Assembly (NCBI GenBank): GCA_011109175.1
Contig: RDEW01000001.1
Coordinates: 2,325,863-2,389,862 of the forward strand
From: Dicyema japonicum
Lineage: Eukaryota; Animalia; Dicyemida
Length of the DNA: 64,000 nucleotides
Direction of reading: 5' to 3'
Numbering within the stretch: position 1 is the first letter of the stretch; the number at the start of each line of letters is the position of its first letter. The translations under genes and the position numbers were made by a program. The notes beneath the pieces are model-generated. The model was not told where the DNA came from, did not search any database, and was given only the letters and a program-made list of their open reading frames with translations. Positions 14,081 through 20,780 of this stretch are shown piece after piece.

Positions 14081-15930
14081 GGGAATGTTAGCTTTCACAA
14101 AAGCTTCTGCGATTAGCTTTGATGTAATTGATTATTTTCGACCTTAAACATTTTAAAATATTAACGACAAATCAATTTGGGGACAAGATTAAAGAACAGA
14201 CAATTTATTTCTGCAAGATCTATATACAAGATCTTTAAGAATTAAAGTAGTCTATCTCGGATGTCCATTTTTAAGATGTAGATTTTCAATGTATATTTTC
14301 TTTTGTTCTACTCCTTCAACAACGAACGTATGCGACAAAATCTCGGATGTTTTCAAATATAGAATGTCGGATTTGGAATCAAACAGTCGAAATAACGATG
14401 TCGTCCTCATAAAATTCCGCAAATTCTGAATCATTCCGTAGGTAAAACACTATTATTGAGAAAAGCAATAATTTAGTCGAAATAACGATGTCGTCCTCAT
14501 AAAATTCCGCAAATTCTGAATCATTCCGTAGGTAAAACACTATTATTGAGAAAAGCAATAATTTCTTTATCTCTTCGAAATTACATGTTAATCCCAACAC
14601 TTATTAAATATTATGCTTCAGTCTTACACAAAGATTTCTCCAGAGATCATCAAGGTACTTGAAGAGGATTAAACTTGAAATAGGCATGATTTTAGACTGC
14701 ATCCTATGTCCAACGGAATATACCTATGATGCAGAACTCCAGAACCAGAGGACCGGATTCCACCTCAATTATGGAACTGAGGCATCTCTAGCATTGGATA
14801 TGTTATATTTAATACGTCGATAAATACGAATAGGAAATTGGAAGAGATCTCACTTGAGACCAATTCGAAAGGCTGGCAAGGACTCGCCTTCTCTCAAATA
14901 GGGTGTCCAAAAATCCTCACTGTCATCAGCACTTCAATTTGTATATACACGACATACCAAAACCCACAGACGAAAACTGTGTCCTCCTTTCATATGCGGA
15001 CGCTGCAAGGTACTACGAAGTCGTTTCTCTAATGGTCAATAGAATGCTAAATTCCCTAACCCAATAGTTAGAAGGATACTTGAATCCCTATTACGACCAC
15101 ACCAACCACCCTGGGAATGAAGTTTGACCAAGGACTTCATTCGAAAAAACATGTTGTTAATTGGGCGACTGTGTCACTTACGGGAATGAGGATCCTGAAG
15201 ATAATCTTAAAACTCCTCGGAAAAAACGCTGGGTCCCTCTGCTGTCTATCGACCTACCCAAGTGGTAAATGGGTAATACCAGGATATCTTCCGGCACCGT
15301 TAGGAGGTTAAAGGTAGAGCAGAGTGCTCTCTTCTTAGTAACCTCAAAATTGTTGGACATGGTTTCAAGAGTGTTTTGTCACTAGACACAAGCTTTTCAA
15401 TCAGTTATCGATCCGATCATTGATGCAGATTGATTGATCGATTCGGACGGCCCTGGGTATCTTTAGTGGAATCCGTCTAGCTTTCCGATTCTCTGATAGG
15501 TGTAGCAAATGGGGTTCGATGCTCCCAGAACCCTGGAAATTATTTATTTCAACAAAATGAGATCGACATTTGTAAAACACAAGCAATCACAGTATTATTA
15601 TTAACCCAAGAACCCCAATAGTTAATTTAATTACTAAATTAAGTGATCTCGAAGTCCTCAATCAGAATTTTCATTTTCTCCTCGTGCGCCTTTTGGAATC
15701 TGACAAAACTTCTCTGTGGGCGGGGTAGTTTTGGAAATAAAAATTGGAAAGGGGTGATGTATACCCTTCTCATAAGACACGTCGTACTGTGTATTGTTGA
15801 ATCACAGTATTATTATTTAAGCAGTCACATTTGCAGAGGGATCAAACCATAATATATTTTCATAATATATTTGTTAAAAATTTTATATTTTAATTTAAAT
15901 TATTACATATTGGCGCTTATTTTGTGTTTC

Positions 15931-18829
15931 ATGTCTACTCTTAATACAAAGAATATTGATGCCTTTGTGAGAATAAGGTTTCGTTTATTATAATTAATCA
16001 CACAGGCCACTTAATTCAACAGAAACCGGTAGTTGTGTAACGTCAAATATGAGCTCACTTAAAGTCTCCCACGAATCATCAGTGAAGACATACCATTTTT
16101 CTAGAGTCTTTGATGAGAATTCTAGTCAAGAAGATATCTTTACTTCAATTGCTAAACCCACCATCAATAAAATGCTATCTGGTCACTCATGTACAATATT
16201 CACGTCATAACCATTCAATATAATTTAGATATGGCCAAACAGGTTCAGGAAAGACATTTACAATGGAAGGCATACTCGATGATGCCAAACTCTCTGGCAT
16301 TATTCCACGAGCAATGTCATTATTACTGAGTAGTACGAACAGATATGTTGTCATCGAGAATTATTAGAACGTACTTTCTATTAAAGTTTCTTTCATGCAA
16401 ATTTACAATGAAGAACTATTTGACCTGTTTGCCAATAATAACAAGCTCACTCTTTTTGAGGATCACAAAGTTAATATTATTTATAATCTTAGGGAAATGT
16501 CATCACCAGGGGACTCAAAGAATTTGATGTCAAAAATGAGAGTGATTTCCGCTCTTTACTGCATCGAGGGATATCCAACAGACGTGACAATGAGGTTGTA
16601 GAGTATCACTACTTTGTAGGCTCTGTCTATATTTAATGTGACCGTAATTAGGAGGGATGATAAATTGAATAAGAAAATGGTTGGAAAACTGTATTGTGTG
16701 GATTTGGTTGGGTCTGATAATAGTACAAGAAATAAACAGAACAATGGTAATTTTTGTTATGACTGCAGAGAGGATTAATCAGACTTTACTGGCATTGGGG
16801 AAAGTCATCAATTTATTGGCAAAGGGGGATATGAATACACCTTACAGGTTAGGACTTTTAGTTATTTAAGGGATAGCAAACTGACGAGAGTATTAAAGGA
16901 TTCTTTGGATGGTTCCTCACAAACCATAATCATAGCTACAATATCCCCATCGGTCTCGTGTGTTTTACAGACTCTGTCGACTCTGTCCTATGCATGTAAA
17001 GCTGTAATGGTATCAACAAACTCAATATCAAATCAGACCGACATAATAAAAGTGAATGTAAAACTCACAGTAGGAGTACAAAGAGACTATTTACATACTA
17101 AAAGTTAATATATTGGCGACAAAGGAAAGAATTGGAATAGAATTGACTCCTCAACTGCTTAGGTTTTAGTTGTGGTTATTAAGTGAACTTGATGATAATC
17201 TTGTATCTACAAAGAAAACTATAAACGAATTGACTAGTCAACTTTTATATTTAAACAAATCCGCAATGGAACATGAATGTAAAGCTGACAAAGAACGTAT
17301 TATTTTCGAAAAAGTCCAGCATAAATTAGATCATGTTTTATCAGTTAATGAACAACTCACAAAGATTTGTGATGTGTTTGTGGGTAAATTAGAGTTGGCT
17401 GAGTCTAATATAATTAAATTTACATATTCTAACATGTCTGATGAAGACATTCTCAGAGAGTCATTAGAAAGGGTTAGTTTATAATTATTGTAGATTTACA
17501 ATGATATTCTGTTTATGTATGACACTGTTACAAATATATTTATGGATATTCAGAATAAATCATGTGCTCATGAAAAAATGATTAATAGTAATAGGACTAC
17601 ATTGTTTGTGAACAAAATACAAGAATTAATGGATAATTTTAGTAAATTGCGTGTTATATGTAAACCTGTCATAACAGGTGAGGATTGTATATATTTAGAA
17701 TTACCCCCAACGTTTAATAGTGGGGAGGTAGTCAATGTTGTCAATAAAGGCATTGATTCTTCTATTACACTCATTGAGAATCAGGCTGAGGCAATAAAGT
17801 CAACTTTCAATATGGATAATGTAGTCTTCACATATATATTTAGATTGGTGATTTTGATGATAAATCAGATATTAAGGATATATTTGTTCGTAATATGAAT
17901 GATAGGGATGAAAAGCTACGACATTATTTGGATTACAATTATAATGTAATGATTGTGAATATTGTAGAAACATTACAACAATTATATTGATAATATGCAC
18001 AGATTGAATGAGACAGATAAATGTAGGACTGAAATGATGAAATTATTCAAACAAGACTGTGATTTGTATAGGATGAAACTAAATCAAGATGAAACTATAA
18101 TAAATAATTTGGTGGAATCTTTTAATAAATTACGTAATGTATATTCATAATTAACTATTAGTATGCAACAAATACTAATGTGACGGTTAATAGTCAGGTT
18201 ATTATTGTATGTATATTATTAGTGGTTTGTGGATGCGAATATTATTAATGGAATATCTGATAAACTATTCTCTATTATGAAACAGTAATATTGTAATTAT
18301 TGTAGTTCTATTGATATATGCGAAGACTATAATAAGGAGAATATTAATAACCCCATAGAAGTTGTTAATATTATTGATAGTGTTGGCCGTCTGCTGAATG
18401 AGGTTCGATTGTGTGTTATCTTTAGCAACAAATGTATAAGACTGAGTTTTTCAAGAGAATAAACTCGAGATTGAAAGAACTAGAGAAATTTGGTGATTAT
18501 TTCAAAGAATTGACCAAAAACATGAATGATAATATTCAATCATATGTGTCTAAACGTAAAGACGCTATAGTAGAAAATGCATCTTTTCATAATACTAGTG
18601 AGTATGACTCTTTGAAGGATATATCTATTGATTATGCAAAATCTGTTGCGAATGTTAAATCACTCACTCAATTAATGGACTTTCATAAAAACTTTTTAAA
18701 CTCTGCAAGGTCATTTCTAACTGTTTTTAAAGAGAAAATAAATAATATATCTCTGGAGGATGATGGTTGACGTATTTTATTATTATAGTTTCACATGAGA
18801 GTGAAAACATTACTGATGAAATTCTTTAA
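15931..18829 (+). CDS. Divergent kinesin-5 (BimC/KIF11)-like protein, multi-exon, with long coiled-coil stalk
   Basis: Spliced reconstruction: MSTLNTKNIDAFVRIR|PLN...CTIFT|YGQTGSGKTFTMEG...VSFMQIYNEELFDL...DLVGSD...PYR|DSKLTRVLKDSLDG...TLSTLSYA; GT-AG introns such as 15978-16005 (28 nt) and 16204-16228 (25 nt). Stalk exons and the 3' end are less certain. Confidence 0.85.
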
Positions 18830-19959
18830 TAGTTTTGGTTTACTATTGTGTTTATTATAATAATTCATTGCTAAATCAAAAGTCATGTTTATTTATTGGT
18901 CATATTAATGATTTTTATAAATATAATTATTAGAGTCGAACTTCACAAATTGGCCAATCTTTAAATTGTCCACATTTTGAGAAAAATGATTATTTCCTTG
19001 TTAATTGGCCAAATTTAATTTAATTTTTAATACAAATTAAATAAATTAAAACTTTTATTAATTCATGTTTTTGAATGCTTCTCGTGGACGCTATACTCGC
19101 CTTACTTTTAATGGAAAAAGTAAAATTGTAAATTATTAACAAAAAAATGAAACTATTTCGTGCTGAAGTTTGCTGATAGATTCTTGCATTGAAAAAAGAT
19201 ATCTAGAAAAACAATAAATAATTTTTTTTGTAAAAAACATTTTTGAAAGATTTAAAAAATATCAACTGTAATTAAAGCTGCACATAAACCAAAATTTCTT
19301 ATGCTTTAAGAAAAGTTGGTAGAATGGATGGAGGTAGTAGATCTAAAGGTATTTTTGAAAAATCAATTTTGTGATTGCTTTAATATCCATCAAGGCAGCA
19401 TTTTTTTACTAAAATTGACAATTCTTTAGAAGAATCAAAAAATAGTAAACAAGAATCGGAAAAAAGGCAAAAATATATTGTAGTTAGATTAACTGCGATA
19501 GTGGGTACTCTTAGCCAAGTTGAGTTAGTTCTCTAATTTCTTTTATCGAAGAAAATACAGTTTGGAAATAAATTTTATTTTAGTAAAACTTAAATAAGTT
19601 TTTTGTTTATCTAATGCATCTAAAAATTCTTTGTTCATTTTTCTCGAAATTATTGATTTTATTTTTTTCATTTGGCCACAAAATTCAAAGAAACTAAAAA
19701 TTGCCAANATTTGGCCACAAAATTCTAAGAAACTAAAAATTGTCAATTAGGGAGGGTCGAATGTATTTAATCTATTTTATTAATTTTTAATATACATTAT
19801 TAAGTCTTATAGGTATATTTCGTTTTCTAGATCATATTTTATGTATTATTTTTTATAAAGTTATTTGTCACATGCTATTACGGTTACAATAAAATAAACG
19901 TTACAGTACTTGATCTCTTTATTTTTTAAAATTTATTAACCCAATTAAAGACAAAAATT

Positions 19960-20070: not shown

Positions 20071-20299
20071 ACTTAATTATCTTTATTAATAATACAAAAT
20101 AAAATAAATATTTAATTCAGTGTCCCTTATGACCTTATTTACCGTTATGACATGCGAGATTATATATATTATTTAACTGTTAAATATATATCACCAGGAA
20201 AATCTATCAGACGGATATATCTAGGAATTTCAAACTCTGGCTAATGAATTTCTATTATGGACGAAGAAAACGGGTATGTTTGGAAAACCTCGGTCGAGC

Positions 20300-20780
20300 T
20301 CCCGTTTAATTCCAAATGGAATACCCCAAGGATCTTCTCTATCCCCTACTTACTCTTCAACCTTTTCTTGAATGATATTTCAACTCCGGAGCATGAGGAT
20401 GGCCTTTTACTGGCTTATGCAGATGATATTGTTATTGCATCCAGGGACCAAGACATTCAAGTCGCCTCGGAGAGATTACAATTACTTTTAAACTGCTTAA
20501 TCTACTGGTTAAATGAAAACAATCTGTCGATCAGCTCGGAAAAATCGGTTACATCTCTCCTTACCTCTGATAGGAGAATATCCAACAGGACAGTGGATAT
20601 AGAAGCAGATGGAAGCAAGTTGCCATTCCAAAAATGGCAGAAGATTCTGGGAGTAGTATTCGACACCCATATGACATTTTCGCGGCACGTGGGAAATGTT
20701 TTAAACAAATGTGGAAAAAAAACAACCTCTCGAAGGGGATCTTCGGTTTATAGAAGATCAAAAGTCATCCAGTTCTGAAA
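20300..20780 (+). mobile_element. Jockey-like LINE RT fragment
   Basis: LFNLFLNDI...LLAYADDIVIAS...KILGVVFDTHMTFSRHV. Confidence 0.8.

What the first reader, a model, noticed from the sequence alone, without database searches (positions are those of the whole stretch)
16560..16720. Kinesin-5-like motor with intact P-loop but deleted switch I and altered switch II
Seen: the P-loop GQTGSGKT and helix motif PYRDSKLTR are intact. An in-frame TAG forces splicing to end at 16619 (intron 16595-16619, or a 22-nt variant), giving NRRDNE(V)|ALSIFNVTV. The near-invariant switch I NxxSSRSH is therefore absent (about 10 residues lost), and switch II reads DLVGSD instead of DLAGSE. Established: the switch I arginine and switch II glutamate form the salt bridge needed for ATP hydrolysis, and non-catalytic kinesin relatives exist (Vik1/Cik1, Smy1). 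Inference: a nucleotide-binding but hydrolysis-deficient pseudo-kinesin-5 with a long stalk, perhaps a static microtubule cross-linker or heterodimer partner.
Basis: partly seen in the sequence, partly recalled or inferred. Interest (0 to 1): 0.7.

Follow-up and report, generated by a model that had tools for sequence, protein, structure and literature searches.

The report
Kinesin-5-like gene lacking switch I
An intact, selectively constrained gene in a tiny-intron animal parasite encodes a kinesin motor protein that keeps its ATP-binding loop and microtubule-binding face but has lost the nine-residue "switch I" loop needed to hydrolyse ATP, so it is most likely a non-motile microtubule-binding relative of the spindle motor kinesin-5.

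Summary
A + strand gene (15931-18829) can be read as 19 exons joined by 18 GT-AG introns of 21-28 nt, giving an uninterrupted 828-codon frame. Its motor domain matches Pfam Kinesin exon by exon. The P-loop GQTGSGKT and PYRDSKLTR are intact. Switch II reads DLVGSD. Exon 6 cannot start before 16620 because an in-frame TAG lies just upstream. Its third residue maps to the residue immediately after SSRSH in human Eg5 and kinesin-1. Alignment to 12 panel kinesins shows a clean 9-residue loss (LNxxSSRSH), and loops L5, L8, L10 and L11 are also trimmed. A second form about 6% divergent in public DNA reads has the same structure. It gives dN/dS of about 0.16 (p = 4e-5), and its only indel lies inside an intron, so this is not a decaying pseudogene. 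One contig from a different sample lacks intron 9, a hint of transcription. No RNA covers the critical junction. The kinesin-5 assignment is only moderately supported: best hits and a clade-specific neck motif agree, but the motor-domain tree cannot exclude kinesin-8 or kinesin-12, and no BimC tail was found. ATPase loss is inferred, not shown. The scan's unchecked notes list other "dead" kinesins in this genome.

The parts
15931..18829 (+). Whole gene: 19 exons, 18 GT-AG introns of 21-28 nt, 828 codons, ATG at 15931, TAA at 18827-18829
   Evidence: Model built. All frame breaks and stops are bridged by tiny GT-AG introns. Pfam Kinesin hits run in order along the exons.
16233..16256 (+). P-loop GQTGSGKT (exon 3, 16229-16346), intact
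   Evidence: Pfam Kinesin positions 81-115, E = 4.6e-10.
16493..16594 (+). Exon 5, ending ...HRGISNRRDNE; corresponds to the strand and helix just before switch I
   Evidence: Weak HMMER mapping to Cut7 179-208 and KIF7 171-200.
16595..16619 (+). Intron 5 (25 nt, gttgta...tttgtag); a 22-nt variant starts at 16598
   Evidence: The frame changes across it. TAG at 16617-16619 is in the frame of exon 6. No difference from the divergent form is listed here. No RNA covers it.
16620..16746 (+). Exon 6, starting ALSIFNVTV. The switch I deletion lies after its second residue: 9 residues LNxxSSRSH are missing.
   Evidence: MAFFT alignment. Residue 3 equals Eg5 S237 and KIF5B S206. Pfam positions 204-243.
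16701..16718 (+). Switch II DLVGSD (canonical DLAGSE), followed by a loop L11 that is 6 residues shorter
16769..17051 (+). Exons 7-8 (intron 7 at 16848-16870): alpha4, L12, alpha5 (PYRDSKLTR) and alpha6. This microtubule-binding face is well conserved.
   Evidence: Pfam 255-279 and 281-324, E = 1.4e-13. PDB best hit is a kinesin-5, 8.7e-11. Near-invariant columns are mostly kept.
17074..17162 (+). Exon 9: neck and start of the coiled coil, carrying the kinesin-5-type motif (…IKEY…ATKERIGIEL…)
   Evidence: Alignment. The pattern occurs only in the 12 kinesin-5-type proteins among 67 panel proteins.
17163..17183 (+). Intron 9 (21 nt), missing from one contig of run X2
   Evidence: tables 4 and 8: record 10 covers 17149-17362 with a 21-nt gap and is otherwise identical. 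The upstream anchor is only about 13 nt.
17184..18829 (+). Stalk and tail (exons 10-19, about 480 residues): poor in Pro and Gly, heptad-periodic, no known domain
   Evidence: No Pfam hit. Heptad score is 0.41 against 0.28 +/- 0.02 for shuffles.
17821..17843 (+). Intron 12, carrying the only indel (2 nt at 17830) that all three DNA-type runs show against the divergent form within the gene
   Evidence: table 4. No such indel lies in an exon; one low-depth contig of X4 alone lacks 1 nt at 16309.

Best explanation
This is a functional gene for a very diverged kinesin, most likely derived from kinesin-5. Its motor domain has become a non-hydrolysing microtubule-binding module. Shown: the gene is intact and is under purifying selection. 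It keeps the P-loop, the RxRP adenine motif (VRIRP), the switch II Asp and Gly, and the alpha4-L12-alpha5-alpha6 microtubule face. It has lost the whole switch I loop (9 residues), 6 residues of L11, and parts of L5, L8 and L10. Inferred from established kinesin enzymology: the switch I serines coordinate Mg2+ and the gamma-phosphate, and its arginine bridges to the switch II acid to close the site. Without them the protein may still bind nucleotide and microtubules, but it cannot run a normal microtubule-activated ATPase cycle. It would then act as a static or slowly exchanging microtubule binder. The roughly 480-residue heptad-periodic stalk could let it oligomerise with itself or with another kinesin, making it a cross-linker, a brake or a partner subunit.
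For: - An 828-codon frame runs across 18 tiny GT-AG introns.
- Pfam Kinesin hits fall in order along the exons.
- A 9-residue gap sits exactly over LNxxSSRSH, confirmed by HMMER mapping to Eg5 S237 and KIF5B S206.
- Of 152 near-invariant columns in the kinesin-5 panel, 98 are kept and 14 deleted. The deleted ones lie almost entirely in switch I and L11.
- The divergent form has the same structure, and the only indel that all three DNA-type runs show against it lies inside intron 12.
- There are 14 synonymous changes over 103 sites against 9 nonsynonymous over 383 sites. This gives dN/dS of about 0.16, or 0.23 in the worst case, with p = 4e-5.
- An intron 9-less contig occurs in a run from another sample.
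- The stalk shows heptad periodicity.
- Non-motile kinesins are an established category, for example KIF7 and KIF26A/B (PMC12919046).
Against: - No RNA covers the exon 5/exon 6 junction.
- Expression rests on one contig with a roughly 13-nt anchor.
- dN/dS comes from 23 substitutions in the motor domain only, against a comparator whose status (allele, strain or sister species) is unknown.
- No structure prediction or enzymology was done.
- One low-depth read contig carries a 1-nt deletion in exon 3.
- Proteins of this lineage evolve very fast: the model's terminal branch is 1.69 against a median of 0.37. Loop trimming may therefore be general compaction, not specific to this gene.
Confidence: 0.55

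Rival explanations
1. The protein is still an active, if slow or unusual, motor. Other residues, such as the RR of NRRDNE or the Asp of DLVGSD, would take over the role of switch I.
For: The P-loop, the switch II Asp/Gly and acid, the neck and the microtubule face are all conserved and under selection. KIF7 shows that low ATPase activity can still matter in a non-motile kinesin.
Against: From general knowledge, no kinesin is known to hydrolyse ATP without the switch I serines and arginine. The 9-residue loss removes the whole loop, and L11, which couples microtubule binding to catalysis, is also cut by 6 residues.
Confidence: 0.12
2. The motor is dead as described, but the gene is not of kinesin-5 origin. 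It would be an orphan, or a kinesin-8- or kinesin-12-related gene, whose similarity to kinesin-5 is superficial.
For: AU tests do not reject grouping with kinesin-12 (p = 0.33). The kinesin-8 constraint gives a slightly better likelihood. Exon 2 scores best with kinesin-8 and exon 6 with kinesin-1 in the PDB. Loop 5 is short, and no BimC tail was found.
Against: The six best BLAST hits of the whole model all fall in the clade of P0092, which the PDB search labels kinesin-5. The free tree places the model next to kinesin-5 with SH-aLRT 91. The post-motor motif A.[RK][ED][KR].G[IV].[ILVM], at the right spacing, occurs only in kinesin-5-type necks of the panel: 12 of 67 proteins, and none of the kinesin-8 or kinesin-12 members.
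Confidence: 0.2
3. It is a recently inactivated pseudogene or an untranscribed relic.
For: A catalytic motif is lost. No RNA run is on record for the junction. A low-depth contig carries a frameshift at 16309.
Against: The 828-codon frame is intact across 18 introns. dN/dS is about 0.16. The only indel that all three DNA-type runs show against the divergent form lies in an intron. A spliced contig is seen in X2.
Confidence: 0.08
4. It is an artefact: a mis-modelled splice or an assembly error hides a normal switch I.
For: The junction has no RNA support. Two alternative 5' splice sites lie 3 nt apart.
Against: Only 25 nt separate exons 5 and 6, and no frame there encodes SSRSH. In-frame TAGs block any extension of exon 6. 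Independent contigs of a second form are colinear.
Confidence: 0.03

Closest known systems
Kinesin-5 (Eg5/KIF11, Klp61F, Cut7, plant KIN-5)
   Same: The motor is N-terminal and starts KNIDAFVRIRP. The best full-length hits are kinesin-5 (37% identity, 225 bits). A kinesin-5-type motif marks the start of the neck and coiled coil. A long helical stalk follows.
   Different: Switch I is absent. Switch II reads DLVGSD. L11 is 6 residues shorter and the neck linker 4 residues shorter. The hallmark long loop 5 is cut by about 7 residues. No BimC box or tail domain was detected. The protein is 828 residues, against about 1000-1100. The motor-domain phylogeny is unresolved.
KIF26A/B (kinesin-11) and KIF7/Costal2: non-motile animal kinesins
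   Same: They keep the kinesin fold and microtubule binding while motility is lost or greatly reduced, and they are reused as scaffolds (PMC12919046; Zhou et al. 2009 as cited there).
   Different: They belong to different families (kinesin-11 and kinesin-4). KIF7 keeps a switch I region and a measurable ATPase. Here the whole switch I loop is deleted.
Vik1/Cik1 (yeast partners of the kinesin-14 Kar3)
   Same: A kinesin-derived domain that binds microtubules without catalysis and sits on a coiled coil. (From general knowledge.)
   Different: Vik1 and Cik1 have a C-terminal motor-homology domain with no P-loop at all and no detectable motif conservation. Here the domain is N-terminal, and the P-loop, RxRP and switch II are kept. 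No partner has been identified.

Membership tests
Kinesin superfamily (Pfam PF00225) | Kinesin motor-domain fold and sequence across the full domain | tested here: met
   Six of the seven motor-domain pieces searched hit PF00225 in colinear order, covering positions 27-324 of 327. Three of them exceed the gathering score alone. Exon 5 is too diverged to hit.
Kinesin superfamily (catalytically competent motor) | All nucleotide motifs present: N1 P-loop GxxxxGK[ST], N2 switch I NxxSSRSH, N3 switch II DxxGxE, N4 RxRP | tested here: not met
   N1 (GQTGSGKT) and N4 (VRIRP) are present. N3 is altered to DLVGSD. N2 is deleted entirely.
Kinesin-5 | Motor domain groups with kinesin-5 in a phylogeny | tested here: inconclusive
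   The free tree makes it sister to the kinesin-5 clade with SH-aLRT 91. AU tests do not reject kinesin-12 (p = 0.33) or kinesin-8 (the constrained tree is 1.4 lnL better). The panel was labelled through the PDB and does not cover all families.
Kinesin-5 | Kinesin-5-type neck linker and start of coiled coil (NKPEVNQK ... IK(D/E)Y..EI..LK......REKNG.Y.P) | tested here: met
   The model reads ...SNQTDIIKEYKETIYILKVNILATKERIGIELTP. The motif A.[RK][ED][KR].G[IV].[ILVM] occurs in 12 of 67 panel proteins, all of them with NKPEVNQK-type necks. The neck linker itself is degenerate and 4 residues shorter.
Kinesin-5 | Long loop 5 (the site of Eg5 inhibitors) | tested here: not met
   Loop 5 is about 7 residues shorter than in the panel kinesin-5s.
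Kinesin-5 | C-terminal tail with BimC box (Pfam PF13931, Cdk1 site TP.[KR]) | tested here: not met
   No Pfam hit appears in any stalk or tail exon at E <= 10, and no TP.[KR] motif is seen in the tail. Caveats: the exons were searched singly, and the ten panel kinesins scanned, nine of them in the kinesin-5 clade of the tree, also lacked PF13931 at E <= 0.001.
Kinesin-5 | Bipolar homotetramer through the central BASS region of the stalk | not testable with these tools
   Only heptad periodicity of the stalk could be shown.
Non-catalytic 'pseudo-kinesin' (functional class, not a clade) | Kinesin fold kept under selection while a catalytic element is missing | tested here: met
   Switch I is deleted. 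dN/dS is about 0.16, p = 4e-5. The ORF is intact. Loss of ATPase itself was not measured.

The most novel reading that the evidence does not exclude
This lineage of tiny-intron parasites (probably dicyemids) may have no catalytically competent kinesin-5 at all. In that case its kinesin-5-derived genes (this one and the two other 'dead' kinesin-5-like loci noted elsewhere in the genome) would work only as passive microtubule cross-linkers, and spindle bipolarity in an animal would be built without kinesin-5 motor activity.
Probability: 0.1. Interest if true: 0.75.

Novelty: new variant of a known kind. Interest (0 to 1): 0.45.

Why it matters
Kinesin-5 is the near-universal motor that pushes spindle poles apart. 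Its ATPase site is among the most conserved in the superfamily and is a drug target. A kinesin-5-derived protein that stays under selection after a clean excision of switch I would be a natural "rigor-like" variant. It would show which parts of the motor (P-loop, microtubule face, neck) are worth keeping when catalysis is gone, and it would add a kinesin-5-lineage case to the short list of non-motile kinesins (KIF7, KIF26, Vik1/Cik1). With the scan's other unchecked notes of eroded kinesins in the same genome, it also raises the question of how an animal of about 30 cells with a reduced genome runs mitosis. The value is limited for now. Everything beyond the sequence is inference, and the lineage evolves so fast that motif loss is less surprising than it would be elsewhere.

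Tried and rejected
- **RNA evidence.** The look-up of sequencing runs (kind rna) returned four runs of one study, none on record as RNA. When laid, X1, X3 and X4 are DNA-like because introns are retained. X2 has no depth on 16526-16767, so the junction stayed untested.
- **Search for the organism's own annotated protein or close orthologues.** The HMMER representative search used exon 8. It found no hit above 64% identity over about 47 residues, so there is no self protein and no near orthologue to compare for the deletion.
- **Motor-domain phylogeny as a family test.** It was inconclusive.
- **Pfam on stalk and tail exons.** Nothing was found.
- **The search of earlier findings by sequence.** The result was blank.
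- **Literature on dicyemid kinesins.** None was found.
- **Read-through of intron 5 in the frame of exon 5.** Rejected: it gives unrelated residues and a TAA.
- **A hidden exon carrying SSRSH.** Rejected: only 25 nt are available, and no frame encodes it.
- The joined spliced protein has no reference, so I did not send it to any search, family-scan or structure tool. As a result there was no AlphaFold model and no fold search.
- **Costly word-index search.** I did not use the search for homologous proteins. Its length window (0.55-1.75x) makes single exons useless for finding full-length kin.

Full report
**1. What is in the sequence**

The region around the finding is a + strand eukaryotic gene cut by very short introns. 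Starting from the ATG at 15931, every stop codon and frame change up to the TAA at 18827-18829 can be bridged by a GT...AG intron of 21-28 nt. This gives 18 introns, 19 exons and an uninterrupted frame of 828 codons.

Six of the seven motor-domain pieces searched match Pfam Kinesin (PF00225) in colinear order, covering profile positions 27-324 of 327. Exons 2, 3 and 8 each pass the gathering score on their own. Only the 34-residue exon 5 gives no hit. No other kinesin gene lies in the 64-kb window (tblastn).

**2. The observation**

- GQTGSGKT lies at 16233-16256.
- Exon 5 ends ...GISNRRDNE at 16594.
- The next 25 nt (16595-16619, gttgta...tttgtag) look like the other 17 introns.
- Exon 6 begins ALSIFNVTV at 16620.

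In the frame of exon 6 there are TAG codons at 16599-16601 and 16617-16619, so that exon cannot reach further upstream. In the frame of exon 5, read-through gives unrelated residues and a TAA. A 5' splice site 3 nt downstream (22-nt intron) also keeps the frame and only adds one Val. DLVGSD lies at 16701-16718. PYRDSKLTR is split by intron 7.

Three independent mappings locate the missing piece:
- HMMER aligns residue 3 of exon 6 (the S of ALSIF) to S237 of human Eg5 and S206 of human kinesin-1. That is the residue directly after the His of SSRSH.
- Exon 5 residues 1-30 align, weakly, to Cut7 179-208 and KIF7 171-200.
- A MAFFT alignment of the locally joined model with 12 panel kinesins (11 from the kinesin-5 clade and one kinesin-8) shows NRRDNEAL opposite KRRTAETL, followed by a 9-column gap over LNKQSSRSH.

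The same alignment shows further losses: 6 residues in L11 (RAREAG), about 7 in loop 5, 4-7 in L10 and about 11 in the L8 region. Of 152 columns that are nearly invariant in the kinesin-5 panel, the model keeps 98 and deletes 14. The deleted ones lie almost entirely in switch I and L11.

**3. Is it an artefact or a pseudogene?**

Public runs from one 2019 study hold the locus. Contigs of three runs from one sample (X1, X3, X4) cover the gene with introns retained, so they are DNA. They represent a form about 4-6% different from the window. Contigs identical to the window occur in the same runs at lower depth.

The divergent form runs through 16281-16882 without any gap, and no difference is listed between 16559 and 16643. 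Two independent sequences therefore share the structure without switch I.

Across the gene, the only indel that all three DNA-type runs show is 2 nt at 17830, inside predicted intron 12. None lies in an exon.

Of the listed substitutions within 16281-16882, 14 are synonymous (103 sites), 9 are nonsynonymous (383 sites) and 6 are intronic. This gives dN/dS of about 0.16. If the three unlisted differences were all nonsynonymous it would be 0.23. The binomial p is 4e-5. The motor domain is therefore under purifying selection despite lacking switch I.

Caveats: the substitution count is small, only the motor domain is covered, and the comparator could be an allele, a strain or a sister species from pooled animals.

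**4. Expression**

No holder is on record as RNA. Run X2, from a different sample, has a 193-nt contig identical to the window over 17149-17362, except that 21 nt are missing exactly where intron 9 was predicted (17163-17183). This looks like a spliced transcript, but the upstream anchor is only about 13 nt. X2 has no depth on 16526-16767, so the critical junction is unconfirmed.

**5. Which kinesin?**

A HMMER search of 1.84 billion representative proteins with exon 8 found about 5000 kinesins. None was above 64% identity over about 47 residues, so neither this protein nor a close orthologue is in that library.

Evidence for kinesin-5:
- In a local BLAST of the joined model against the 150 returned proteins, the top hits were P0092, P0116, P0101, P0012, P0126 and P0062, at 213-225 bits and 35-39% identity.
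- P0092 is a clear kinesin-5: 434 bits to KIF11, against 291 to the next family.
- Other clades of the panel were labelled kinesin-12 (P0083, P0094) and kinesin-8 (P0129).
- A maximum-likelihood tree puts the model as sister to the kinesin-5 clade (SH-aLRT 91), on a very long branch of 1.69 against a median of 0.37.
- Beyond the motor, the model reads ...IKEYKETIYILKVNILATKERIGIELTP, opposite the kinesin-5 ...IKDLYGEIERLKAEVNAARDKNGIYLP. The pattern A.[RK][ED][KR].G[IV].[ILVM] at that position occurs in 12 of 67 panel proteins, all with NKPEVNQK-type necks. It occurs in no kinesin-8 or kinesin-12 member.

Evidence against, or inconclusive:
- AU tests do not reject placing the model with kinesin-12 (p = 0.33). 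The kinesin-8 constraint even gives a slightly better likelihood. The motor-domain phylogeny alone is therefore inconclusive.
- Loop 5 is short, the neck linker is degenerate, and no BimC box or PF13931 is found in the tail.

I take "kinesin-5-derived" as the best reading, at roughly 70-75%.

**6. The rest of the protein**

Residues 346-828 give no Pfam hit. They contain only 5 Pro and 7 Gly. Their hydrophobic heptad periodicity is well above that of shuffled sequence: 0.41 against 0.28 +/- 0.02. This is consistent with a long helical, coiled-coil-like stalk. The measure is crude and does not reveal the oligomeric state.

**7. Mechanism**

Shown: the gene is constrained; it keeps the P-loop, RxRP, the switch II Asp/Gly and acid, and the alpha4-L12-alpha5-alpha6 microtubule face; it has lost switch I and much of L11.

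Inferred from established kinesin enzymology (my knowledge): the switch I serines bind Mg2+ and the gamma-phosphate, and the switch I arginine forms a salt bridge with the switch II glutamate to close the site for hydrolysis. Removing the loop should abolish normal turnover while leaving P-loop nucleotide binding and microtubule binding possible.

The most likely role is a non-motile microtubule binder that oligomerises through its stalk, acting as a cross-linker, a brake or a partner of another kinesin. Non-motile kinesins used as scaffolds are known, namely KIF7 and KIF26A/B (PMC12919046).

**8. Context**

Tiny introns (mode 21-23 nt here), about 36% GC, LINE fragments and scaffold gaps fit the published dicyemid genome (PMC6736024). 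They are also compatible with myxobolid myxozoans (PMC13644364). I did not establish the organism.

The scan's earlier, mostly unchecked notes list several other kinesins with eroded motifs in the same genome, including two more kinesin-5-like loci. Motif erosion in kinesins thus seems common in this genome. That lowers the surprise of this single case. It also raises the wider question of whether any competent kinesin-5 remains. One of those loci might simply be the allelic copy of this gene; I could not check.

**10. Verdict**

This is a new variant of a known kind, a non-catalytic kinesin probably of kinesin-5 origin, and of moderate interest.

Noticed in passing
window 20257-20778 (+): A 173-aa ORF carries a reverse-transcriptase-like motif (…LLAYADDIVIAS…). 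It is probably a fragment of a non-LTR (LINE) retrotransposon just downstream of the kinesin gene.
   Followed up: no
window 14379-14600 (-): An ORF contains the same roughly 29-residue stretch twice (…LLLFSIIVFYLRNDSEFAEFYEDDIVIST…), which indicates a local tandem duplication of about 90 nt.
   Followed up: no
window 16595-16600 and 16347-16352: Introns 5 and 3 both begin GTTGT(A/C). Each therefore offers two GT donors 3 nt apart (25/22 nt and 21/18 nt) that keep the frame and differ by one Val. This is a possible tandem-donor wobble.
   Followed up: partly
window 17678-17698: Predicted intron 11 is 21 nt and has no stop codon in frame. Splicing and retention both keep the frame, giving ...ITELPP... 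against ...ITGEDCIYLELPP....
   Followed up: no
window 16309: One X4 contig (16241-16385, depth 14.8 of about 140) lacks 1 nt in exon 3. It could be a frameshifted copy or allele, or a read error (tables 4 and 8).
   Followed up: no
window 16348-16490: Two X2 contigs match the gene at about 94% identity, then leave it at 16455 and at 16490 with unrelated letters. They could come from a paralogue, a chimera or another species (table 7).
   Followed up: no
window 16163-16283: Summed contig depth is 2-3 times higher over the P-loop exon than over the rest of the gene. This probably reflects contigs of other kinesin genes matching at 90% likeness or more (table 2).
   Followed up: no
window 18930-19400: The AT-rich stretch downstream of the stop shows many contigs with small insertions, 36-160-nt skips and loose ends, so it is probably repeat-like or highly polymorphic. 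N-containing stretches lie nearby, for example around 19709.
   Followed up: no
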